Positions 8,306 through 54,642 of a DNA stretch of 64,000 nt are shown piece after piece; the stretch's first letter is position 1, and each line of letters opens with the position of its first letter. The notes beneath the pieces are model-generated. The model was given only the letters and a program-made list of their open reading frames with translations, ran no database searches and was not told the origin of the DNA. Source of the DNA: Selaginella moellendorffii (taxonomy: Eukaryota; Plantae; Lycopodiophyta); assembly GCF_000143415.4 (NCBI RefSeq), contig NW_003314282.1:1755374-1819373 (forward strand). Reading direction: 5' to 3'. A program made the position numbers and the translations under genes.

Positions 8306-10305
8306 ATGGAATCGTCGATGAGAAAGCTCCTGCCAAGCCCGCATCGCCGGACTGGGCTTCTCAAGGATCAGCTCCAACTTGTGCCGAGAAAGGGCGATGG
8401 CGGGCGCGAGGATCGCTATGAGATTGCGCCAATCTCCGACCCCCTCTCCTTCGACAAGGGCTTCTTTCTCTTCATCCGGGCGTGTCAGCTCCTCACGCGC
8501 AAGATGGAAGGAGTGACAATTGTGGTGGGAGTTGCCGGCCCCTCGGGCGCTGGTAAGACCGTCTTCACGGACAAGGTCGCGAGCTTCTTGCCCGGGATTG
8601 CGATCATTTGCATGGACAACTACAACGATTCAAGCCTTGTCATCGACGGGAACTACGATGGTAAGAATCCAAACAAGGTGTGTGTTGTTCTTTGTTCTTT
8701 CGTTTCTATTCGATAGTTTTGGTTGTTTTGCTTTGGTGCTGATAGATCCCAGGATCGTGGACTACGAAATTCTGCTTGACAACATCAAGAGCTTGAGAGC
8801 TGGGAACTCTGCCGACATTCCGATATATGATTTCAAGCTCAGTCGTCGAGTTGGCTATAGGTGAGTTGTCTTTCCTTCCTTTTTGCTAGCATTGGGATCA
8901 AGGACCAAGTATGTTCTTGCGTTGTTTCCAGGCGTCTGGAGCATCCATCGACGAGAATTGTGATCGTGGAAGGGATATATGCTTTGTGTGAGAAGCTACG
9001 TCCATTCCTGGATCTGCGAGTCTCTATAACCGGAGGAGTCCATTTTGATCTCGTCAAGCGGGTTCTCCGTGATATCAATCGCTCCGGCCAAGCTCCGGAA
9101 GACATCATCCACCAGATATCAGAAACGGTGATTTTGTATGTTCTTGTGAACAGCAGTGGTTTCATAATTCTCTCTTTTTCATCTCTTTGTTGTTTTTCGC
9201 ACTTAACTTTGTGTCGTTGCCAGGTTTATCCCATGTACAAGGTGTTCATAGAGCCGGATCTAGCAACAGCACACATCAAAGTAGTCAACAAGTTTAATCC
9301 TTTCTTGGGATTTCAGAGTCCAACTTACATCCTAACGGTTCTGGAGATTCCTTCGTTCTTTCTTTTCTTTTTCTGATTCAAAGTTTTCGATGCTCCAGTC
9401 TTCTCGTCATGTCACGGAAGAAGAGATCAAAGCTGCCATTGGCTCCAAGTTCACTGAAGCAACAGAAGATACTTACGATATCTATCTCTTGCCTCCAGGC
9501 GAAGACCTGGAAACCTGCCAGTCTTATCTTCGCATGAGAAATCGCGATGGAAGATACAGTTTGATCTTCGAGGTCTTTTAGAAAAAATGCTCCATCCAAG
9601 ATCTATCTTTGTCACTTACCATGACCATGTTTCTCATTTTTCTCTAGGAACTTGTGACCGATGAGGATTTTATCATCTCGCCAAGGATCACTTTTGACGT
9701 GAGCGTGAGGCTCTTGGGAGGCCTCATGGCTCTTGGATACGAGATGGCCACCATTATGAAGCGGTCGAGCCGGGTGTTTTGTGACGAGACTGAGAAGATC
9801 GTCGTCAAGATTGACAAGCTCGAGCAAGTCCAGCGAAAGTATGTCCAGGTAGATCCTTTCTTAGCTTTTTTGTTCTTGAGGTTTTTGTATCTCACCAAGT
9901 TTTGACAGATACAAGGCAAAGATCGATCGCTCGTCGCGGATATCGGGAAGAAGCTGGGGCTCGAAGGCTCGTACATTCCACGCTCTTATATAGAACAAAT
10001 ACAACTGGAGAAACTCACTGCCGAAGTAGTGGTATGGAAAAGAATCGACGTGTTCTTCTCATCTCGATCGTCCAAACAGGCATTGCCGGAGGACCTCAAG
10101 AACAAATTAAGCTTGCAAACTACCACTGTTCCGGAAAGTCCAGTTTCATCCAAAACTTATAGCAGAAGGTATGAAGAAATTCTCGTTTTTCCAAGCTCAA
10201 AAACTTCCTTTTTTTCTACAGCTTGAGCTGGAATACCTCGAGGTTTGTCATTTTGTTTTTCTTCCGATCTCCAAAACACTCGATTCACAGAGTTAAGTGT
10301 TTGAT
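8306..10305 (+). pseudogene. 3'-truncated duplicate of TTM (uridine kinase-like + CYTH) gene
   Basis: Same exons as the 14926-17517 gene up to the duplication junction. The last exons (coiled coil and TM anchor) and the intron acceptor AG are missing. Confidence 0.85.
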
Positions 10306-10306
10306 T

Positions 10307-11703
10307 CGGTGGTGTCGCCCGACGGTCTCTACGCGCGCAACCGGGTGATCGAGATGTTTGGGCGCTCCGGTGGCCCGATTGACGCGCAGGTGGTCTTCGA
10401 ATCGATGACTGCTAAGAACCTCTTCTCGTGGGTTCTCATGATCACGACGTATGCAAGGAATGGTTGGCTCGAGAGCTCCAGGTCCATCTTCAATGCGATG
10501 CCCCAGCGGAATCTCGTGGCATGGAATGTTATCGTGGCGTCGTATGCCTCGAATGGGCATCTGGATGGTTCTTAGAGGCTTTTTAATGAGATGCCCGAGC
10601 GGAACTTGGTTTCCTGGACATCGATTCTTGTCACGTACTCGCAAAGCGGGTGTTACAACACGGCTAGGCGAGTGTTTGATGAGATGCCGCAGAGGAATTT
10701 GATCTCCTGGACCTCTATGCTTGCAGCAAATGCCAGGAGTGGGTATCTGGAAGAAGCCGAAAGAATATTTAGTACCATGCCCCAGTTGGATGTGATAGCT
10801 TGGAATTGTCTCCTCGCTGTGTATTGCCAAAATCATGATGTTGAGAACGCAAAGACATTTGTTAGGACTATGGTGGAGTGGGACATTACTTCGTGTAATA
10901 TAATGCTTTTGCTATATGCCCAAGAAGGGCATTTTTGTAAGTGCAACAGATTTTTTTCCGACATGCCGCAGACGGACATGGTGTCTTGGAACACTTATCT
11001 CGCCATTTGCATGAACTTTCGGAAATTGGAGGAGGGTAAGTTCGTGTGTGATAATATGCCGCAGAGAGATGCATCTTCTTGGTCTTTCATGATCACAGCA
11101 TATGCCCAAGAAGGGTATCTTGCAGAAGCGAGGGTGGTTTTTGATTCACTGCCTTTCCAAAATCCAGTAGGAAGGACGTCAATCATGGTTGGTTATGCTC
11201 AAACTGGAAACCTAGATGCCGCTTACAAGATCTTCCAAGAGACACCACAGCGAGACCTGTTTGCATGGAATGCAATGCTCGCAATGTTTGCCCAAGACAG
11301 CGAGAAGCAAACCAAAACCAGAGGGATGCTTGACGAGCTCAAACTCACCGACAATCCAGACGAGTTCTGCTTCACGGCAGCGCTGGTTTCGTGCAGCCAT
11401 GGCGGGAAGGTTTCTCGAGCAAGGAGCTACTTGGCGTTGATGAGCTGTGACTATGGATTGCCTCCAGCCAAGCTCCACTACAGCTGCATGGTGGATCTCC
11501 TGGGACGGGCTGGATATCTCCAAGACGCGCGCGAGCTCATGGAATCCATGCCTTTCACCACCGAGGCATCGGATTGGATCGGCTTTGCGGGAGCTTGCAG
11601 CAGCCATAGCTCCCGCTTCCACGGATCGAAGCTCGCGCTTGGGTTGGATCCAAGCAACGCAACGGGGCACATCCTCGTCTCGAACATCCTGTGCATGGGC
11701 TGA
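10307..11703 (+). pseudogene. 5'-truncated PPR duplicate with premature stop
   Basis: Lacks the first about 27 codons and the promoter of the 3639 copy. CAG->TAG at 10573-10575. The residual ORF 10591-11703 is still open. Confidence 0.85.
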
Positions 11704-43512: not shown

Positions 43513-44418
43513 TCTTTTAATTACATTTTCTGTAATGTAAACTTTTGAAATGGTAAAGTAGCTGGTAGGTTTAGTTAGTTTTAATCTTATTTTCTTAGTA
43601 AAATTTAAAAACAAACGCTGTTTTGATTGTCATACTTTTGTTACACTAAAAATTAATTTGGAATAGTATCAAAACAATAAATATTATATTCCACTTTAAA
43701 AGAAGAATTGAGGAAGTAACTATAAATATGTGTTTCTTAAAAAGAAATTATAAAATACCAAGTGACACAACAAATGTTCATTGCAAAAGGTTAACTGTCA
43801 ATACCAGTTAGAACATTGCATATGACATCACAACACCCTTTTATCTCCCACTTCAGGTAATTGGCAACCTCCCGTTCCCATGTGTTAAGAACAAACATCA
43901 ACATGATTATTCTCTAAAATGTGGTAACCTTTTGGTAGTTGCCTCTATCAGATGGTTGTCATTGGCTGGATTTGACAACCCAAAAAATTTGGCAACTCCT
44001 TTTTTATTATTATAAATTGACTTTGGTTTAAACATATTTTAAGCTTCTCCTCTTCTGTGGCTTTGAGGGCAGGCTTAGTGTGGCCTATGGGCAGTGCCTT
44101 AAGCATTAGTGCTGGCCATGGCTAAGCTAAGGGTAAGCTGGGTGCACCTCCTGACCATGGCTGCTAAGGGCTAGGCTGGCAGGTATTTGTCATAGCCATG
44201 CTACAAGAGGAATCTTGTGCCTAGGAGCATGGTTTAAATTCCAGTGTTGGTGGATAATTTAAAAAGTTTGCCACATGAATATAGTGAGAATGTTTTCTGT
44301 TTTAATTTTCTTACATTCCAAGGCCATGGCAACGCCATACCCATTATCAAAGTTCATCTCCACTTCTTTAGTGTTGTAAATACCAAAACTCCCATACCAA
44401 AGGAACTCTATGGTTACA

Positions 44419-44429
44419 ATATATATATG

Positions 44430-44511
<82 letters not shown>
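44419..44511. repeat. (TA)n microsatellite, about 90 bp
   Basis: Direct read. Confidence 0.97.
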
Positions 44512-44514
<3 letters not shown>

Positions 44515-44799
44515 AAAACGATAGCAAACCAATCATGTTGTGCTAATGTGGAGCTCAAAATTTTCCTATGTTTTATTATGACTAAGAGAAACAAAACAAA
44601 TCATGCTTAAATGTATTTTACCTGATGAGACTTTAAAATAAATGCCAATGAATTTGTTGTAATTAAGTATATTTATATGAATATTATGTTGAAAAATAAA
44701 TTAAAAACAAAAAAAAAATTATAAACTGGTTTTAATCTAATTTCTTTATCACAAATTATTATTTAAGAAATAAGGAAGCTAATTTCTTTAGAAATATTA

Positions 44800-45663
44800 A
44801 TGAATATTTTATTTTTTATTTTTATACTTTTTAGTAATAATAATAATAATACATGTTCTGGAGTAAATTATTTATATCAAAGACAACAAAACGCACTATT
44901 ACTTCATCAAAGGATTGAAGTGATGGGTTTAACTCTTGGGTTAATAAGAACTTTAGGATTTCATACAATATATAATTCAGGTACAACAATTACTGGAGCA
45001 AGTATAATAAGTGGAGGAAGAAGAATCACTGTAAGGCTATGGTTTGCAAGAGCAAGAACTTGTGAGCTTAATCCTACAGGACTTCAAATTGAAGGACATG
45101 TATTACAAAACTTTTTAATGATTATATTCAATGTGATTGTTGATAATGTAAGGATTAATGGGTATGGAAGTTTGTTTGCAACATATGGAAATTTTGGTAT
45201 TGATTATTTCATGAATGCATTTGGTTCTTCATCATTTATATTAGTAGAAATAAATAAAATTCTATATATTAATGATTGTGACTTTAGAGTGAATAACCTT
45301 ATTAGTGGACCAATAGGTCCAGAGTCAATTTTATTACCTTATAAATCAATTTATTCTTCTAATAATAAATTTCTATTTACATTTTCAAGTAAGTGTCAAT
45401 TGCAACTTAAAGATGAATACTATAATATTATCTGGACAAGCATTAGTTATTGCCTTAATGAAGATGGATATTTTCTTTCTTTACAAGTTGATGGGAATTT
45501 ACTAATACAACACATCTTTCATAAATCAATTTTATGGGCATTAAATCTTTATTGTCAACCACAACCAAATTGTGTTCTTTCATCTGCTCTAGTTGTAAGA
45601 AACGATGGGAAACTTGTTCTCTATAGAACAGATACACAAGAAATTGTATGGATAAAACCATAA
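44800..45663 (+). CDS. Putative secreted protein: unknown N-terminal domain + bulb-type (B) lectin domain
   Basis: Hydrophobic N-terminus. C-terminal SIYSSNNKFLFTF..CQLQL..IIWTS, LSLQVDGNLLI, LVVRNDGKLVLY..IVW are typical of B-lectin. Intronless and very AT-rich. Confidence 0.7.
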   Translation: MNILFFIFILFSNNNNNTCSGVNYLYQRQQNALLLHQRIEVMGLTLGLIRTLGFHTIYNSGTTITGASIISGGRRITVRLWFARARTCELNPTGLQIEGHVLQNFLMIIFNVIVDNVRINGYGSLFATYGNFGIDYFMNAFGSSSFILVEINKILYINDCDFRVNNLISGPIGPESILLPYKSIYSSNNKFLFTFSSKCQLQLKDEYYNIIWTSISYCLNEDGYFLSLQVDGNLLIQHIFHKSILWALNLYCQPQPNCVLSSALVVRNDGKLVLYRTDTQEIVWIKP

Positions 45664-46199
45664 TACGGTTCTAAATTCTTTGATTTATGAAATTCAGCAA
45701 TTTATCAGTGGCAATTGAGGTAAAACATATAGACCGATCAATTCAAAATATAAATTGCTTTGTAATATTATAAAAACACCTTCAAACACATGTATTATTA
45801 TTATATCAACAATGAGTAAATACCAATTGAGTTAGCATTTAAATTGCTTCTCCTCCAACAGTAGCAATGTGAAGTAGCATCTGAGCACTCAGTTAATAGT
45901 TTGGAAGGCCACTACCAAAGGTGCATTGCAGCAGTAGTAAGTAGTAGCGTTTTGTTGTTGTTGGAAAAAAAGTGCAAATTACAAACTTGATCTTTTGATA
46001 ACCACCAAAGAACTGGTATAACTTGGTCAGGAGGTCTTGCACCCTAATTGTTGTGACCAAGTATATTCCAAGGTTCCTGATCAATGTTTCCAGTTCAAAA
46101 GAGCCCGAAACTTTTCTAACTCATGGATCCATCTTTCCATGCCGTCGGGAAATTGTTTTAAACACAAAGAAAGCTATGGTGTGCATCGTCTTCCTCTTC

Positions 46200-47562: not shown

Positions 47563-47883
47563 CTAGGGATTGAACTTGACCTTCTCTTTGTCTTTTGAAT
47601 CTTCACAATCCATGGACTTCTTCCTGCAAATGTTGATATTGATGTTGATGTTGTTATTGTTGTTATTGTTGTTCCTCCTGTGCTTGCCTTGGCCATGAAC
47701 TCCATCTATATAATTGTCCATCTCTGGAGAATCCATTAGAGAACTGGACACTGGTTCTTTTGCTGATGAATTCTGAACCCCAACACCATTGTCCTTAGAC
47801 AAGAGCTCCCTTCTACTCTGAGAAGACAATGCAATTTGGAAAGTGGCAAATACAAACACTAGAAACACCAAAGCAGTCTTCAT
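47563..47883 (-). CDS. Small secreted Asn/(Ile-Asn)-rich protein, member 1
   Basis: Signal peptide MKTALVFLVFVFATFQIALS; motif GKHRR-N7-INININIC; K/E-rich tail; TATA-like element about 60 nt upstream; paralogues nearby. Confidence 0.75.
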   Translation of the reverse strand: MKTALVFLVFVFATFQIALSSQSRRELLSKDNGVGVQNSSAKEPVSSSLMDSPEMDNYIDGVHGQGKHRRNNNNNNNNINININICRKKSMDCEDSKDKEKVKFNP

Positions 47884-48495
47884 AGCTGTAGCAGTGGCTG
47901 ATCAACGCTTGCAATCAGCACTTGTTGGAGCAAGGAGGCCTTATATTATAGGCCAGCATGCATTTTGGAAAGTTGCCAAGTGCCTCAAAAAACTCCATGC
48001 AATCACGTTGCTTGATATTTTGTATACTCGTCAATGAAATCTGTCCAGAAATGTCAGGATGACCGAATGGTCTAAGGAACGTACTCAAGTTCGAATGCGT
48101 GGGTTCAAATGCCACTTCCAGCATTGAGTTTTTCCAACGAAACTATTACTATCGTTTATTTGCGAAAACCATTACCATGTGCAAGATGATCACTATTCTC
48201 GTCAGTTCCCGGCAGAGGTTAGCGGGCGTTCCTGGATCCAGATGTGAGTACAGCAAGAAGGCCCCCTCAGTGGCAAAACAAAAGGTTCAAGACTTTGGAT
48301 TCCCATCTCCACCTGTTCTGCTCAGAAGGCTCAGGACATAATGCTAGAGCCGAGCAGATCAATCCACATCGAGATGACGCACTGCGAAAGCTCTCGACAC
48401 AGATAGAAAGGAGTGCTAGAGAAGTTTGTTCTGGAGTGCAAAAATGGTGTGAAACATACTATTTTATTGCAAGAAACTCTACAAATAACAAGTTT

Positions 48496-48831
48496 CTAAG
48501 GATAAGTCTTCTTTTCCTTCTCCTTCTCCTCCTCACGTTTGTGATCCATAGACTCGTTCTTGCAGAAGTTGATGTTGATGTTGATGTTGTTGTTGTTATT
48601 ATTCTTGCCCTTCCTGTGCTTGCCTAGACCGTCACCCCGTTTCTGGTTCTCATAATCATCATCCTTCTGTGGGAAATCCTCAAAGACTTCGACATCAACA
48701 TCATCAGCATCCAAATCCTCAAAGATATCTACATCAACATCATCTGCATCCAAACCCCTTCCACTCGAAGTAGACAGTACAATGTGGAATGTGGCGAACA
48801 CAAAGATGAGAAACACCAAAGAAGCCTTCAT
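48496..48831 (-). CDS. Small secreted Asn/(Ile-Asn)-rich protein, member 2
   Basis: MKASLVFLIFVFATFHIVLS signal; duplicated DADDVDV(D/E)(I/V)FED; GKHRKGK-N6-ININININFC; K/E tail ending YP. Confidence 0.75.
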   Translation of the reverse strand: MKASLVFLIFVFATFHIVLSTSSGRGLDADDVDVDIFEDLDADDVDVEVFEDFPQKDDDYENQKRGDGLGKHRKGKNNNNNNINININFCKNESMDHKREEEKEKEKKTYP

Positions 48832-49265
48832 GATGTGTAATAGCAATATGCCCAAATGTGATTGATAATTGGATCTTGGAGAGGCTTTATATTAACATCT
48901 AGAATGCATGCCTATCAGCCAAGTGTTAATTCCATGCAAAAGCATCAGTAGTATTGTAATTTAAAAGGTAAATTGAATTAGTATCTAAATATAGTCTCCT
49001 CTCGTCAGGACATTAAAATCTAAACTAAAGTGGAAGAAATTCATCTGAAAGGAGCTAAAAGTAATTGATATGGATATGTTGAGAGAGAGAGAAAGCTACT
49101 AAAGTTTTCTAATGTTTTCTGGGACTCTCAATCAATCACTCAAAGTCCGCCATCTTCTTCTCTCCAAAAGTATGCAACGGCTGGAGAAGTTAACGTGATA
49201 AATATATCTAGCACCTGATGAAAAAAGTAGAAAGTAAATTATTTTTTATGAAACTACCTTGCTTA

Positions 49266-51546
49266 TTAGATATATCTAGTCTCCAAAAGCTCTGATACAC
49301 GTCTGGAAGGAAGTCTCGATCCATCCCAAGATGAAACAGCAAGAAACTCTCCCTGAATCTGTACGCTAGAAAAAGCACAAGTTTGAGGAGAAACCACAGC
49401 CTCCAAAACTTCCTCGAGAGTTTTGGCGACATGCGACATGGACGGCCTCTCCTTCCCACTGACTTTGGTACACTCCAGCGCCAACTTCACTGCACGATAG
49501 AGTGGCTCCGGCTCCAAAGGCACTGCAAGTCTAGCATCCAACACCGAGCTCCACTCGTCACGTTCCACCAGATCGAGCACCCAAGCAACCAGACTCTGGA
49601 TCTCTCTTGACAGATCGATTGGCTTTTGACCAGACATGAGCTCGAGAAGAACCACTCCAAAGCTGTAGACGTCGCTTGTGGTTGTGAGTTGGGAGGAGTT
49701 CCCATACTCAGGATCCAAGTAACCGGGAGTTCCAACGATCGTCAAATTGCTCAGGTGTGTTGCATTGTCTTGAGGACCGCACACCGATAGCCCAAAGTTT
49801 GATACTTTCGCGTTCCAGTCGCAATCCAGGAGGATGTTTGACGATTTCACGTCCCTGTGGGTGACGCTGGGCGATACATACCTGTGGAGGTACTCGAGGC
49901 CTCGGGCAGCTTGTGCCGAGATTTTGATCCTTGTTGTCCATTCCAGTGAATTGGAAGAATACAAGTTGTCGTGTAGGGTGCCTCTAGACATGAATTCGAA
50001 GACCAGGAGCTTCTCTTGCTCGCAGTATCCGATTAAGTTTAGGACGCAAGAGTGGTGTGTTCTGGCAAGAAGTTTTAGCTCCTTTCTAAACATTTCACCA
50101 GACCTGTTTTTTTATATTTAAAGAAAAGGAAGTAAATACTAAAATACTGAAGATAAATAAATACCTTGTACAGGCCTTTGCTTGTTTGATAGCAACTTGA
50201 CAACCATTGTGAAGAACTCCTTTATACACTGTTGCAAATGAACCTTTTCCCAATATTGAGTCATCACAATAATTGTTCGTGGCTGCTTGTAGCTCAGACG
50301 CCGAAAAACATATAACTCCATGCCCAGAAATCTTTCCAAACTTTGCAGCTCCACATTTCAAATACACCAAAATTCCCACAGCCGCAGCTCCAAAACAAGT
50401 TACATACAACACAAACATAATCCTCCTCCAGCTCTTTGATATCTCATCTCCACTAGTAATATCCAATTTGCCACATTTTCTGTCGAAGCTATCTCCACAA
50501 GGAGAGATCTCTACGTTGTCGCCAACACAAATGGAGCAGTCCAAACACACTTTGTCAGAGAGTGAGGGGCAAGATGTACTTCCATGCAGCTCGTATTGGT
50601 TTTTCCCACACCTGCTTGTGCAAACTCCCTGGCTCGCATTGAAGTCTTCGTTCTTCAATACACCAGAGTTTCCCCAACACACGATCTTCATAGCCCTGTC
50701 CAGCCTCACACCACAAGTGTAGAAATCACCAGCTGAAATGGCTGAAAAGGTGGCGTTCTCCGGAACTCGAAGTTGCGCAAACCTGTTATCTCCCCAGCAT
50801 ACGGCTTGGTGATTGTCTGCACGCACTCCACAAGTATGGCGGAATCCTCCAGTTATGTAAGAAAACTTGAGACCAGGAGGAGGAATTGCAGGACTGGGAT
50901 TGCTCTTTTCACCTCCCCAGCAGAGAGTTTCTCCTGCTTGAGCTGTTATTCCACAAACTACATATGCTCCAGCAAACAAAGCCATGAACTTCTTATCATT
51001 TGCTGGTTTTGGGATTGCACCTGGCACTTCTCCCCAGCATGCTGTTGCTCCATCTAGTGTCAGGCCACAGGAGAAACCACTTCCAGATGAGATCGACACG
51101 AAGGCTTGGTTTGGAACAGTAGAAGAGTTTATACTCCCCCAGCAGTCGGCTCTATTGTCGTAGCTTCGTATTGCACACGCATGGCTTGCACCACTGCTTA
51201 TGGCTGTATAGCTAACATTTAGAAAACTTTGTGGAGCTTCGAGACTGCCCCAGCATATTGGAAAATGATTGCCATACTCCAGCCCACATACAAATTTCCC
51301 TCCAGAGGATATGGTGACTAGTTGCTTGACTTGGGGTTGTTCGTGTGTGCGAATGGATCCAAAACAAACGGGTGCCATGGTTTCAGCTTGTAAAATACAT
51401 ACCAAGTAAGAACCTGTATTTTTTGGAGTGAAATAGCTGAGAGTCCACAGTGAACCTAGCGTGGTCATGTAGCCAAAGCTTGCTGCAAGATGCAAGTAAT
51501 TAAGCTCTACAATCGATAATAGCAACACTGTGATATGGAGAGACAT
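49266..51546 (-). CDS. CRINKLY4-related receptor-like kinase (crinkly/RCC1-like repeats, TNFR-like Cys region, TM, kinase)
   Basis: Repeats ISSGGKFVCGL, AISSGASHACAI, SISSGSGFSCGL, ITGGFRHTCGV, AISAGDFYTCGV; Cys-rich region; TM; GKGSFATV, VAIK, HRDVKSSN, NFG, GTPGYLDPEY. Intron 50104-50164 restores the frame. The start ATG (51546 or 51621) is uncertain. Confidence 0.88.
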
Positions 51547-52464
51547 TCTTGTGGAAGCATGATAATAGAGATCTTTTGAAGGAAAAGCGTTCAACAAACA
51601 AAATACTCTTCTACGGATCATAGTCCTCCTGTGAGTTCGAGAAGTTTTTACTTTGTCTTTTCTTATACAGAACAAAGTTTGAAAATGGCCAAGTTTGGAA
51701 TTATGGATACATCCATTGACTCCTTCGGGAGGCACACCTGCCGCTGTGATACCAATCTCCCGATCGTTTACTTGTAGTGGTGACGGATTAACGGCTGAAT
51801 ACTTGTTAGAGGCAGGAGGCCTTATATTATAAAAAGGTCTATCCAGCATGCATTTTAAAAGTTTTAAAAACTCCATGTAATCACGAATAAAGGATTTTCT
51901 AAACTTCAATAATAAATGTCAGGGTGGCCGACCGGTCTTAGGAGCGGACTCAAGTTCTGCTCCTCTTTAGAATGAATGGGTTCAAATGCCACTTCCGACA
52001 TCAAGTTTTTCCAAGCCAAGTACTCTAAATTATGAAAAGCATCACCATGCACCACACCGAGAAAACTTACGTGCAGATTAGGTCCCGGCAGAGGCTTTTG
52101 GTTAGAAGCGGGCATTCCTGGACCAAGTCGAGGAGGAACACCCTCCAGCTGTGTGAGCACAACAAGACGGCCCTCTCAGTAGGCCGATAAAACAAGAGGT
52201 AGGCTGCAGCAGAAGTCTCTGGACATTTATGCTAGAGCCCAGCAGATCGGGTTCCACATTGAGGTTTCCATTGCGCCAAAACACGCAGGATACTGTACAC
52301 CGAAGTCGAGACTGTTCAAGGCAGCTCGCGGTGAGCCAATAGACTTAAATCAGAGGATGCACGGCAAAAGCTTTTACAAGCCAGAAGGGAATACTAACGA
52401 AGCTTTCTGGAATGCCTGAGATGCGGAATTGGTGTGGCAAGGAGCTCGTACAAATGCCAAAGTC

Positions 52465-52755
52465 TTAAGGATAATTCTTCTTTTCCTTCTCCTTCTCCTC
52501 CTTGTGTTTGTATCCATAAACTTGTTCTTGCAGATGTTGATGTTGATATTGATGTTGTTGTTGTTCTTGCCCTTCCTGTGATTTCACTCCATTGATCGTT
52601 CTCATGACCATCATCCATCTGTGGAGAATCCTCAAAGACTTCAACATCAACATCATCCCTAGAAAATCCTGAAAGATATCTATATCAACCCCAAACCCCT
52701 TCCACTTCTGGAAAGTGGCAAACACAAAGACGAGAAGCACCAAAGAAGACTTCAT
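52465..52755 (-). pseudogene. Frameshifted third member of the small secreted protein family
   Basis: DNA closely follows member 2. Indels shift the frame repeatedly (the N/IN tract reads QQQHQYQHQH), yet the same ATG and stop are used. Confidence 0.7.
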
Positions 52756-52932
52756 GATGTGTAGTAGGAATGGCTTGAATTGTGCCCAAAAATGTAATTG
52801 ATAAAATTGGAGCTTGGAGAAGCCTTACATTAACATCCAGGATGCATGCCTGCTCGGCTAATTCCATGCAAAAGCATCAGTGGTAGAAAAAATATTAACT
52901 CTATTTTGATATTTATGTTTTAACAATTTTAA

Positions 52933-54642
52933 TCAGCTAGTGTTGATTAATCCTCCAATGACTGTACACCTTTCAAGAGAATTTGGAGCAAAAGGCATAT
53001 TAGCAAGTAAATCTCGTGCATCATCTAAATGTCCAGCACGGCTCAAGATATCTAGCATGCAACTATAGTGCTGTTTATTAGGTGTCAAACCATAATCAAT
53101 ACTAATCGAAGCAAACCTCTGTTTCCCAACTCCAACTTTCCCTGAGTGGCTACAAGCCAGGAAAAACATCACAAAGCAAGCAAGATCAAGCTCATGAACC
53201 ATTGCTGCAGTGTGAAAAACAAAAAATGCCTCTTCATAGTGCCCGTTTTGTGCATATGCCGCTAACAACGCTCCCCAAGTCACAAGATTGTGCTCTGGGA
53301 CTGCATCAAAAAAATTTTGAGCTAATTTGGGGCGTTTGTGAAGAGAATAGACCGAGAGCATTGTGTTCCAAGACACAGAATTATGCTCGGGCATTGTCTC
53401 AAAGACATCCTTTGCTTCTTCCAGATGCCAGTTTTGGGAATATGCCGACAACATGGCATTCCAGGTGTAGGTGTCATGCTCTGGCATCCAATCAAACAAG
53501 TGCTTAGATTCCTCAAGATGCCCCTTAAAGGCATATGCTCGGAGCATAGCAGTCCAGCACACCACATCCCTCACGTAAGAAGTATCAAAGAGGAATCTAG
53601 CCGCATTTATGTCCCCGTGACGGGAGTATGCCACCATCATAGCGCTTACTAACACCAAATCCCACTCGGGCATATCCTGGAGAATATCTTTTGCCTGCTG
53701 GAGATGCCCTTCCTGGGCATATGCATTTAGCATGGCCGTACAGGATACGAGGTTGTGGAAGGGCATTTCGCTGGTAAAGATGCGCTTGGCATCTCTCAGA
53801 TTCCCGCGCTGGCCGTACACGAACAGCATTGCGCCGTACGAGACGAGGTCACGCTGGGGCATCTGGGCGAAGATGTGCTCGGCATCTTGGATATTCTGGG
53901 AGCACGAGGAGAGCATGATGTTCCAGGACAATAGATCCCTCTCGGGCATCTTCTCAAACGTGTTGGCCACATTGGAATCTTCCCCGGCTTTGGCATATGC
54001 GTCAAGCATGGAGTTCCAAGATGCCAGATTCCTCCATGGGGTGGCCTGGAATATATGTACGGCCTCTCTCAGTGAGCCGTTGCTGGCGAACGCAACCAGT
54101 ACGGTCGTTAGGGTGATAGAGTCTCGCTCGGGCATATTCTCAAATAGGTATTGTACGGAATGAACATGCCCGGCTTGGGCATATGCTTGGATCATGGTGT
54201 TCCAAGAGACGAGGCTGTGGAGTGGCATAGCCGCGAAGATGGCGGCAGCGCTGGAGATACGCGGGATCTGTGCGTATGCGTGGAGCATCGCATTGGAGGA
54301 GAGGAGATTCCTCTCGGGCAATCGCGAGTAGAAGGCTTCCGCGCTGTGGATTTGCCCACTTTGGGCGTATGCCGCGAGCATCGCGTTGAGCGCCACTTGA
54401 TCCCATCCGGGCATGGCGTGGAAGAGATCTTCGGCATCGCGCAGCCGCCCGCCCCGCCCCAGCCCCGCCAGCATCGAGGTATACGAGACGAGATCTCGAT
54501 CTCTGCGCGGCATGGAATCGAAGACTCTCTTCGCGTCGCGCAATCGCCCATCGCGGAGATGGGCGGCGAGAATGGAGTCCAATTCGCGGGATGGATCGAT
54601 CGAGCATCCCTGCGAGCTCATGCGATCATGGATCAATCGCAA
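52933..54642 (-). CDS. PLS-class PPR protein, E domain truncated
   Basis: Long intronless ORF of 31-aa repeats ending HYSCMLDILSRAGHLDDARDLLANMPF. First ATG at 54621. Confidence 0.88.
   Translation of the reverse strand: MRLIHDRMSSQGCSIDPSRELDSILAAHLRDGRLRDAKRVFDSMPRRDRDLVSYTSMLAGLGRGGRLRDAEDLFHAMPGWDQVALNAMLAAYAQSGQIHSAEAFYSRLPERNLLSSNAMLHAYAQIPRISSAAAIFAAMPLHSLVSWNTMIQAYAQAGHVHSVQYLFENMPERDSITLTTVLVAFASNGSLREAVHIFQATPWRNLASWNSMLDAYAKAGEDSNVANTFEKMPERDLLSWNIMLSSCSQNIQDAEHIFAQMPQRDLVSYGAMLFVYGQRGNLRDAKRIFTSEMPFHNLVSCTAMLNAYAQEGHLQQAKDILQDMPEWDLVLVSAMMVAYSRHGDINAARFLFDTSYVRDVVCWTAMLRAYAFKGHLEESKHLFDWMPEHDTYTWNAMLSAYSQNWHLEEAKDVFETMPEHNSVSWNTMLSVYSLHKRPKLAQNFFDAVPEHNLVTWGALLAAYAQNGHYEEAFFVFHTAAMVHELDLACFVMFFLACSHSGKVGVGKQRFASISIDYGLTPNKQHYSCMLDILSRAGHLDDARDLLANMPFAPNSLERCTVIGGLINTS

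What the first reader, a model, noticed from the sequence alone, without database searches (positions are those of the whole stretch)
47563..52886. Candidate linked secreted-peptide/receptor module: a CRINKLY4-like kinase nested in a small secreted protein cluster and behind a copied peptide promoter
Seen: three paralogous small signal-peptide genes (47563, 48496, 52465) surround a CR4-like receptor kinase, all on the minus strand. The upstream region of peptide 1 (about 47915-48370, including TATAATATAA and CATGCA motifs) is duplicated at about 51797-52265, directly upstream of the kinase. The similarity stops about 25 nt downstream of the TATA element, near an expected transcription start. 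Known: linked ligand-receptor loci exist (Brassica SCR/SRK), CR4-family ligands are poorly defined, and CATGCA is the RY element bound by B3 factors. Inference: the kinase acquired the peptide's promoter, so the two may be co-expressed and possibly functionally coupled. Physical linkage alone does not show binding.
Basis: partly seen in the sequence, partly recalled or inferred. Interest (0 to 1): 0.78.

Follow-up and report, generated by a model that had tools for sequence, protein, structure and literature searches.

The report
Receptor kinase behind copied peptide-gene front end
In the spikemoss Selaginella moellendorffii an old local DNA duplication placed the promoter and start of a small, species-restricted secreted-protein gene directly in front of a CRINKLY4-like receptor kinase. 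The copy is real, but comparison with the other copies of both gene families gives no sign that the peptide and the kinase are a ligand-receptor pair.

Summary

**The genome and the duplication**
- The genome is Selaginella moellendorffii.
- A block of about 1.1 kb occurs twice: 48953-47887 and 52885-51755.
- The block holds a type-A peptide gene, a spacer with a decayed tRNA-Leu(CAA), and the promoter, 5'UTR and first ~6 codons of a type-B peptide gene.
- One copy precedes peptide gene P1. The other precedes a CR4-like kinase with seven crinkly repeats.

- P3 is a frameshifted relic, and part of it is deleted in the other haplotype.
- The homology does not stop 25 nt after the TATA. In the other haplotype it runs into a peptide-type ATG that is in frame with the kinase.
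- The RY/TATA promoter module is family-wide: seven copies at four loci.

**Ligand-receptor coupling is not supported**
- Three other peptide loci have no CR4-like kinase within 10 kb.
- The kinase's nearest paralogs have no peptide gene and no promoter module.
- The kinase also has its own TATA-like element.
- The window allele has lost the captured ATG and carries NFG in place of DFG.

**Not tested.** I found no expression evidence.

**Related scan notes.** The scan earlier noted other co-copied peptide/membrane-protein pairs in this genome and judged them block copies as well.

**Verdict:** a partial-duplication chimera. Use of the captured promoter is at about even odds.

The parts
52825..52870 (-). 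Family promoter module (RY-like TGCATGGA, CATGCAT, TAATGTAA) in front of P3
   Evidence: Regex and alignment
52465..52755 (-). P3: frameshifted relic of a type-A peptide gene. A 96-codon ORF persists, but the family motif is out of frame.
   Evidence: Six deletions relative to P2. Window 52656-52175 is absent in haplotype B.
51773..52464 (-). X2: copied spacer between P3 and the kinase, homologous to X1
51917..52002 (+). Decayed tRNA-Leu(CAA) inside X2, antisense to the peptide and kinase genes
   Evidence: 67 of 86 positions identical to the intact tRNA-Leu(CAA) at L003 9750-9835. It fails ARAGORN at default settings and Rfam.
51822..51879 (-). Copy of the type-B peptide promoter module upstream of the kinase (TACATGGA, ATGCATGCTGG, TATAATATAAGGCCTC). 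The CACTTGG box is deleted.
   Evidence: The 58-nt module string is identical in both haplotypes.
51755..51772 (-). Remnant of the copied peptide-type start codon region. The ATG is destroyed by a complex indel in this haplotype and intact in haplotype B (L001 7074).
51547..51754 (-). Kinase-specific leader, stop-free in the kinase frame. It holds a TATA-like TGTATAAG (51667), the in-frame ATG 51621 and out-of-frame ATGs at 51716, 51712 and 51560.
50165..51546 (-). Kinase exon 1: signal peptide, seven crinkly repeats, short cysteine-rich domain (8 Cys), transmembrane helix, start of the kinase domain
   Evidence: Pfam RCC1_2. PpCR4 7a0k E 5e-41 and ACR4 7a0j. Repeat coordinates.
50104..50164 (-). 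Kinase intron (GT..AG, 61 nt)
   Evidence: Read from the sequence. The frame is restored across the junction, and exon 2 aligns to paralogue P0004 from window 50105.
49266..50103 (-). Kinase exon 2: rest of the kinase domain and the C-terminal tail. The DFG aspartate is replaced by Asn (codon AAC, 49799-49797) in this haplotype.
   Evidence: Pfam Pkinase E 1e-33. NFG here against DFG in haplotype B.
48887..48938 (-). Family promoter module in front of P2
48496..48831 (-). P2: intact type-A secreted-protein gene (111 aa)
   Evidence: Identical protein in both haplotypes, with 2 synonymous differences
47884..48495 (-). X1: spacer between P2 and P1, carrying the P1 promoter. Source-like copy of X2.
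48053..48123 (+). Decayed tRNA-Leu(CAA) inside X1, with a 12-nt deletion in the variable arm
   Evidence: 57 of 86 positions identical to the intact L003 tRNA
47941..48001 (-). Type-B promoter module in front of P1
47563..47883 (-). P1: intact type-B secreted-protein gene (106 aa)
   Evidence: Intact in both haplotypes. Closest to P0133 at L003, 63% identity.

Best explanation
**The event.** An old local duplication copied a block of about 1.1 kb. The block runs from the promoter of a type-A member of a Selaginella-restricted secreted-protein family, through that gene and its downstream spacer. The spacer carries a decayed, antisense tRNA-Leu(CAA). The block ends about 16-19 nt inside the coding sequence of the next, type-B family member. 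The copy lies directly 5' of a Selaginella-specific CRINKLY4-like receptor kinase.

**What became of the copy.** The copied type-A gene has decayed into the P3 pseudogene. The copied type-B front end (RY-like motifs, TATA, 5'UTR, start codon) now faces the kinase in the same orientation. At the DNA level the kinase is therefore a partial-duplication chimera.

**The two haplotypes differ.** In haplotype B the captured ATG is the first ATG of an ORF that runs without a stop into the kinase. In the window haplotype that ATG is destroyed.

**Shown.** The duplication and its extent, the family-wide promoter module, and the in-frame ATG in haplotype B.

**Inferred.** The kinase may be transcribed from the captured promoter (about even odds). 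The peptide-kinase adjacency is a by-product of the duplication and not a ligand-receptor unit.
For: - **Block homology.** [P2+X1] 48953-47887 matches [P3+X2] 52885-51773 at 75% and 68%, with z = 46 against shuffles.
- **Extension into the coding sequence.** In haplotype B the homology reaches a P-type ATG: L001 7074 ATGAAGACTACTTTGG against P1 ATGAAGACTGCTTTGG.
- **In-frame start.** That ATG is in frame with the kinase, with 74 stop-free codons before the kinase's own start. Only 147 of 20000 shuffles are stop-free.
- **Family-wide promoter.** A seven-way alignment across four loci shows a shared module. The kinase copy keeps 28 of the 34 columns that are invariant in the five intact genes.
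- **Ancestral arrangement.** At L003 an intact tRNA-Leu(CAA) lies 165 nt upstream of, and divergent from, family member P0133. So tRNA plus promoter plus peptide gene is the ancestral layout, and the kinase junction is derived.
- **P3 is decayed**.
- **Linkage is not recurrent.** There is no CR4-like kinase at L003, L004/L006 or L005. There is no peptide gene, spacer DNA or module at the kinase's nearest paralogue pair, L002.
- **The kinase is a real gene.** omega is 0.22-0.25 between haplotypes, and it has the CR4 architecture.
Against: - No transcript or start-site data could be reached. No proteins from transcript assemblies appear for K, P1 or P2.
- The kinase-specific 226-nt leader has its own TATA-like TGTATAAG. 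It lies 46 nt before the in-frame ATG 51621 and 121 nt before ATG 51546.
- Paralogue N-termini match the downstream ATG 51546.
- The copied module has lost the CACTTGG box and the G of the first RY-like motif. It is no better preserved than the module of pseudogene P3.
- The window haplotype lost the captured ATG, yet its kinase ORF stays open.
- Most of the haplotype differences in the leader change the predicted residue (read by eye; no ratio computed).
- Only 10 kb on each side of the other loci was inspected. Linkage at a greater distance is not excluded.
Confidence: 0.6

Rival explanations
1. Inert relic. The copied promoter and start region is decaying junk, like P3. The kinase is transcribed only from its own core promoter in the 226-nt leader and is translated from ATG 51621 or 51546.
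For: - The leader has its own TATA-like element at a suitable distance from the start codons.
- Paralogue N-termini align with ATG 51546.
- The copied module lacks the CACTTGG box and has TACATGGA. It keeps the same 28 of 34 conserved columns as pseudogene P3.
- The captured ATG is lost in the window haplotype.
- A transcript from the copied TATA in this haplotype would carry out-of-frame ATGs at 51716 and 51712 before the kinase start.
Against: - In haplotype B the captured ATG is in frame, with 74 stop-free codons. This arises by chance about 0.7% of the time, times one third for the frame.
- The second RY motif and the TATA block are identical in X1 and X2, although X as a whole is 68% identical.
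Confidence: 0.45
2. True linked ligand-receptor module. P1 and/or P2 are processed to a secreted ligand that binds the kinase's beta-propeller ectodomain. Shared promoter elements keep the two co-expressed, and the linkage is selected, as for Brassica SCR/SRK.
For: - The adjacency and the shared promoter module are kept in both haplotypes.
- CR4-family ligands are unknown, and ACR4 does not bind CLE40 directly (Okuda et al., bioRxiv 10.1101/2020.08.10.245050).
- The ectodomain diverges faster than the kinase domain between paralogues, 51% against 74% identity.
Against: - Three other peptide loci lack any CR4-like kinase within 10 kb.
- The nearest kinase paralogues lack peptide genes.
- The adjacency is fully explained by one block duplication.
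- The longer family members carry repeated KSMD and charged (Lys/Glu/Asp-rich) tail units. To me this looks more like a disordered hydrophilic protein than a processed hormone (my inference).
- P1 shows 7 amino-acid changes between haplotypes, including loss of its second Cys.
Confidence: 0.07
3. Different order of events. The peptide genes first formed a tandem array of 1.1-kb units. The 2.8-kb kinase segment then arrived between two units, either by insertion or by a larger tandem duplication followed by a deletion. On this reading the block was not copied to a resident kinase.
For: - The kinase segment 51754-48954 lies exactly between two block copies.
- Tandem duplication is mechanistically commoner than a displaced insertion (general knowledge).
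Against: - The kinase flanks hold no remnant of a peptide gene or of a second kinase copy.
- The PPR gene ends only about 30-48 nt before the left end of the block, which fits insertion of the block into a very short PPR-kinase spacer.
- This model needs two events.
Confidence: 0.2

Closest known systems
CRINKLY4 receptor kinases (Arabidopsis ACR4, Physcomitrium PpCR4; PDB 7a0j, 7a0k)
   Same: - Signal peptide, seven C-x(8-11)-C[WF]G crinkly repeats, a cysteine-rich domain, one transmembrane helix and a Ser/Thr kinase domain.
- The ectodomain aligns to PpCR4 residues 16-353 at E 5e-41.
   Different: - The cysteine-rich domain is shorter: I count 8 Cys against the six disulfide bridges (12 Cys) reported for CRINKLY4.
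- Ectodomain identity to flowering-plant CCR3 proteins is only about 30%. The closest relatives are Selaginella-only paralogues.
- The window allele has NFG instead of DFG.
- The 5' end is captured from an unrelated gene.
- Placement in the CR4 or the CCR clade was not tested.
Brassica S-locus SCR/SRK (linked secreted ligand and receptor kinase)
   Same: A small secreted-protein gene and a receptor kinase gene lie within a few kb and are inherited together in both haplotypes.
   Different: - No evidence here of binding, matched polymorphism or recurrent linkage.
- Other members of both families are unlinked.
- The linkage is explained by a block copy.
Chimeric genes and promoter capture by partial gene duplication (general class, from textbook knowledge)
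   Same: The promoter, 5'UTR and first codons of a duplicated gene are fused upstream of, and in frame with, a different resident gene (haplotype B).
   Different: Use of the captured promoter and start codon is unproven. One haplotype has already lost the captured ATG.
RY/Sph-element promoters bound by B3 factors (ABI3/FUS3/LEC2/VAL), from established knowledge
   Same: CATGCA/TGCATG motifs are conserved in all seven family promoters just upstream of the TATA.
   Different: Binding and regulation were not tested. The first motif is mutated to TACATG in the kinase copy.

Membership tests
CRINKLY4/CCR receptor kinase family | Seven crinkly repeats with paired cysteines forming a seven-bladed propeller | tested here: met
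   Seven C..C[WF]G repeats, located. They align to the PpCR4 and ACR4 crystal-structure sequences. Pfam RCC1_2 E 2e-13.
CRINKLY4/CCR receptor kinase family | TNFR-like cysteine-rich domain with six disulfides | tested here: inconclusive
   Only 8 Cys in 50 residues. Pfam TNFR_c6 scores E 0.0016, 19.3 bits, below the 29.4-bit cut-off. The domain aligns to the first part of the PpCR4 cysteine-rich domain.
CRINKLY4/CCR receptor kinase family | Single transmembrane helix followed by a protein kinase domain | tested here: met
   A hydrophobic stretch at residues 376-396 of exon 1 (by inspection). Pkinase E 1e-33 on exon 2.
CRINKLY4/CCR receptor kinase family | Catalytically competent kinase (VAIK Lys, HRD, DFG) | tested here: not met
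   The window allele reads NFG (codon AAC, 49799-49797). Haplotype B reads DFG. Paralogue P0124 also has N at this position. ACR4 function does not need kinase activity.
Linked ligand-receptor locus (S-locus type) | Linkage of the two gene families recurs or is conserved beyond one duplication event | tested here: not met
   The linkage is kept in both haplotypes. It is absent at three other peptide loci and at the kinase's paralogue locus.
Linked ligand-receptor locus (S-locus type) | Direct binding of the secreted product to the receptor ectodomain | not testable with these tools
   No complex prediction or assay was available.
Linked ligand-receptor locus (S-locus type) | Co-expression or matched expression of the two genes | not testable with these tools
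   No expression data. No proteins from transcript assemblies were found.
Known plant signalling-peptide families (CLE, PSK, RGF and others) | Match to a described precursor family or motif | tested here: not met
   Pfam gave nothing above its cut-offs for P1, P2 or P3. A profile search of 1.84 billion proteins found only Selaginella moellendorffii relatives. The protein atlas gave no usable hit.
tRNA-Leu(CAA) gene | Cloverleaf recognised by a tRNA finder at default settings | tested here: not met
   The X1 and X2 copies fail ARAGORN at default settings and Rfam. The homologous element at L003 passes. X1 and X2 are therefore relics, with 57 and 67 of 86 positions identical to it.

The most novel reading that the evidence does not exclude
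The haplotype-B allele is a working chimera. The CR4-like kinase is transcribed and translated from a captured peptide-family promoter and start codon. It is therefore co-regulated through the RY-like elements with P1 and P2, and their secreted products are its ligands. That would give the first candidate ligands for a CRINKLY4-family receptor.
Probability: 0.06. Interest if true: 0.85.

Novelty: new member of a known kind. Interest (0 to 1): 0.34.

Why it matters
No ligand has been found for CRINKLY4-family receptors, and ACR4 does not bind CLE40 directly. A physically linked, co-regulated secreted protein would therefore be a valuable lead. My comparisons show that this adjacency arises from a single block duplication and is not repeated elsewhere in either gene family, so it is a weak lead.

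What remains useful:
- A clear natural case of a receptor kinase that has captured a promoter and start codon. The two haplotypes differ at the captured ATG and at the DFG motif, which allows an allele-specific expression test.
- A sharply defined promoter module shared by a Selaginella-restricted secreted-protein family.

Tried and rejected
- **High-copy SINE or transposon.** The window, L001 and L002 hold no other copies of X1/X2. The only outside match is the tRNA part at L003. A genome-wide test was not possible.
- **tRNA call in the window.** ARAGORN at default settings and Rfam found nothing. The relaxed ARAGORN setting that calls X2 also "tRNAs" in 64 kb, so it carries no weight on its own. 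The relic reading rests on homology to the intact L003 tRNA.
- **Peptide-gene remnants in the kinase flanks.** None found; z is 1.4 or lower.
- **Loci of the kinase paralogues.** Four look-ups failed. One, through P0130, worked.
- **Literature.** A search for the gene IDs gave nothing. The CR4 phylogeny paper's supplements do not list this locus.
- **Other blanks.** The protein atlas search of a family member and the earlier scan notes searched by sequence or words returned nothing.
- **Selection on the copied module.** The count of conserved promoter columns is the same as for pseudogene P3, so the test is inconclusive.
- **Joined kinase protein.** It was never built or searched.

Full report
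**Identity of the DNA.** A word search with peptide P2 returned one protein, SELMODRAFT_431674 of Selaginella moellendorffii, at 99% identity. Its contig, GL377729.1 (locus L001), is colinear with the window at about 93-98% identity over 21 kb. L001 is therefore the second haplotype of the same locus, here called haplotype B. The window's own allele of the kinase is RefSeq XP_024533896.1 on GL377586.1.

**Anatomy, all on the minus strand.**
- A PPR gene ends at 52933.
- P3 follows at 52755-52465, then spacer X2 at 52464-51773.
- The kinase K comes next. It has in-frame ATGs at 51621 and 51546. Exon 1 ends at 50165, a 61-nt GT..AG intron spans 50164-50104, and exon 2 runs from 50103 to 49266.
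- P2 lies at 48831-48496, then spacer X1 at 48495-47884, then P1 at 47883-47563.

**The kinase.**
- Exon 1 matches Pfam RCC1_2 (E 2e-13) and, weakly, TNFR_c6. Exon 2 matches Pkinase (E 1e-33).
- Exon 1 aligns to the crystal-structure sequences of PpCR4 (7a0k, E 5e-41, chain residues 16-353) and ACR4 (7a0j).
- It has seven C..C[WF]G repeats, a 50-residue cysteine-rich stretch with 8 Cys, and one hydrophobic helix.
- Its closest relatives are Selaginella paralogues, at 42-51% identity in the ectodomain and 74% in the kinase domain. Flowering-plant CCR3 proteins are near 30%. Full-length ACR4-type proteins lay outside the length range of that search, so placement in the CR4 or the CCR clade is untested.
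- Between haplotypes, omega is 0.22 for exon 1 and 0.25 for exon 2, so the gene is under purifying selection.
- The window allele reads NFG where haplotype B and three of the four paralogues compared read DFG.
They were searched apart by reference.

**The duplication.**
- BLAST of the region against the window pairs 48953-48469 with 52885-52437 (75%, 501 aligned positions, E 3e-100). It also pairs 48373-48323 with 52263-52210, and 48137-47887 with 52014-51773 (68%). A score test against shuffles gives z = 46.
- The repeated unit is therefore a block of about 1.1 kb, [peptide gene + spacer], and not a promoter alone. No other copy lies in the window.
- The kinase flanks contain no remnant of a peptide gene.

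**P3 is a relic.** Relative to P2 it carries deletions of 17, 10, 1, 10, 6 and 1 nt. An ORF persists, but the family's conserved Asn-run/(Ile-Asn)3/Cys motif falls in another frame. In haplotype B, window 52656-52175 is missing altogether.

**The peptide family is wider than this locus.**
- A profile of P1 and P2 searched against 1.84 billion proteins found four more proteins (P0133-P0136). A word search with P1 found one more (P0137). All are from S. moellendorffii.
- They share a signal peptide, a basic site, N5-8(IN)3 followed by I/F-Cys, KSMD, and a Lys/Glu/Asp-rich tail ending in an aromatic residue plus Pro. The longer members repeat the KSMD unit.
- Pfam and the protein atlas gave nothing.
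- The loci I could fetch are L003 (GL377606), L004 with its haplotype partner L006, and L005. None has a CR4-like kinase within 10 kb, either by annotation or by tblastn with either kinase exon.
- Conversely, the tandem paralogue pair of the kinase on the same scaffold (L002) has no peptide gene, no X-like DNA and no promoter module.

**A family-wide promoter and a tRNA partner.**
- Aligning the upstream regions of P0133, P1, P0135, P0134, P2 and P3 with the kinase's upstream copy shows one shared module: TGCATGGA, then CACTTGGCA, then CATGCAT, then TAATATAAGGCCTC, about 60 nt before the ATG.
- The kinase copy has TACATGGA and lacks the CACTTGG box. It keeps 28 of the 34 columns that are invariant in the five intact genes. 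Pseudogene P3 also keeps 28 of 34, and intact genes left out in turn break 1-7 columns. Preservation alone therefore does not show function.
- At L003 an intact tRNA-Leu(CAA) lies 165 nt upstream of, and divergent from, P0133 (ARAGORN at default settings, 9750-9835). X2 and X1 hold decayed copies of it, with 67 and 57 of 86 positions identical. These copies fail ARAGORN at default settings and Rfam.
- The arrangement tRNA-Leu, then promoter, then peptide gene is therefore ancestral. The promoter-kinase junction is derived.

**Where the copy ends.**
- In the window the similarity seems to end 3 nt before the position of P1's ATG.
- Haplotype B shows more. L001 7074 reads ATGAAGACTACTTTGG, against P1's ATGAAGACTGCTTTGG. 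The block therefore ended about 16-19 nt inside a type-B signal-peptide coding sequence.
- That ATG is the first ATG of an ORF that continues, in frame, through 74 stop-free codons to the kinase's ATG at 51546 and on through exon 1. Only 147 of 20000 composition-matched shuffles are stop-free, before counting the one-in-three chance of being in frame.
- In the window haplotype a complex indel has destroyed this ATG. A transcript from the copied TATA would then meet out-of-frame ATGs at 51716 and 51712 first.
- Polarising the amino-acid differences with four paralogues assigns most of the resolved changes to the window allele: 8 against 1 in exon 1 and 7 against 2 in exon 2. Five of the seven exon-2 calls lie in the poorly aligned C-terminal tail. 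Setting those five aside leaves about 10 against 3, including D to N in DFG. This is a weak hint of relaxed constraint on that allele.

**Against promoter capture.**
- The 226-nt kinase-specific leader has its own TATA-like TGTATAAG at 51667.
- Paralogue N-termini match ATG 51546.
- Most of the haplotype differences in the leader change the predicted residue. I read this by eye and did not compute a ratio.
- No proteins from transcript assemblies appeared for K, P1 or P2 in three word searches. This is only weak evidence of low or restricted expression.
- The public gene models here are unreliable. One fuses P2 to P1, one fuses the kinase C-terminus to P2, and one mixes P3, X2 and the kinase.

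**Context from papers.**
- CR4 family members are defined by seven crinkly repeats, a TNFR-like domain, a transmembrane helix and a kinase domain. Selaginella has several CR4-like genes, many of them mis-modelled (PMC4617170). This locus is not in that paper's tables.
- ACR4 does not bind CLE40 directly, its ligand is unknown, and its kinase activity is dispensable (bioRxiv 10.1101/2020.08.10.245050).
- That the RY motif CATGCA is bound by B3 factors is established knowledge. It was not tested here.

**Verdict.**
- The kinase did acquire a peptide-family front end through a block duplication. Whether it uses that front end is open, at about even odds.
- The ligand-receptor idea has no comparative support (about 6-7%).
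- Earlier notes of this scan describe other peptide/membrane-protein pairs in this genome, on other DNA, that were also judged to be block copies. I did not re-test those.

Noticed in passing
window 49797-49799 (minus strand); L001 9044: The kinase's DFG aspartate is Asn (AAC) in the window haplotype and Asp (GAC) in the other haplotype. Paralogue P0124 also has Asn at this position. This may be a kinase-dead allele segregating within one individual's genome.
   Followed up: partly
L003 9750-9835 (minus strand) and 10001-10342: An intact tRNA-Leu(CAA) gene lies 165 nt upstream of, and divergent from, peptide-family member P0133. The tRNA and the peptide gene appear to have been copied together, since relics sit in X1 and X2.
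   Followed up: partly
window 52175-52656, against the L001 6669-6672 junction: A deletion of about 480 bp in haplotype B removes the 3' two thirds of P3 and the distal part of X2. It leaves the tRNA relic, the promoter module and the kinase intact.
   Followed up: yes
window 47563-52870; proteins P0001, P0008, P0002, P0132: All public gene models here are wrong in some way. SELMODRAFT_431674 fuses P2 to P1. XP_024533896.1 fuses the kinase tail to P2, and both it and XP_024523018.1 skip 40 kinase-domain residues. SELMODRAFT_431673 mixes P3, X2 and kinase pieces.
   Followed up: partly
L002 10001-15227 (GL377586.1, same scaffold as the window): A tandem pair of CR4-like paralogues (XP_024533878.1 and XP_024533877.1) is merged into one 1033-aa model in the older annotation. 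The ectodomains diverge much faster than the kinase domains within this Selaginella expansion.
   Followed up: partly
proteins P0134, P0135, P0136 (L005, L004): The longer members of the peptide family carry two to four repeats of a KSMD-x-x-HK-acidic unit in a highly charged tail. This looks more like a secreted disordered hydrophilic protein than a hormone precursor.
   Followed up: no
window 44000-46000: A very AT-rich stretch (GC 0.29) lies just downstream of the cluster. Haplotype identity drops to 93% from 47210 down to 44098, and nothing aligns between 44098 and 43582.
   Followed up: no
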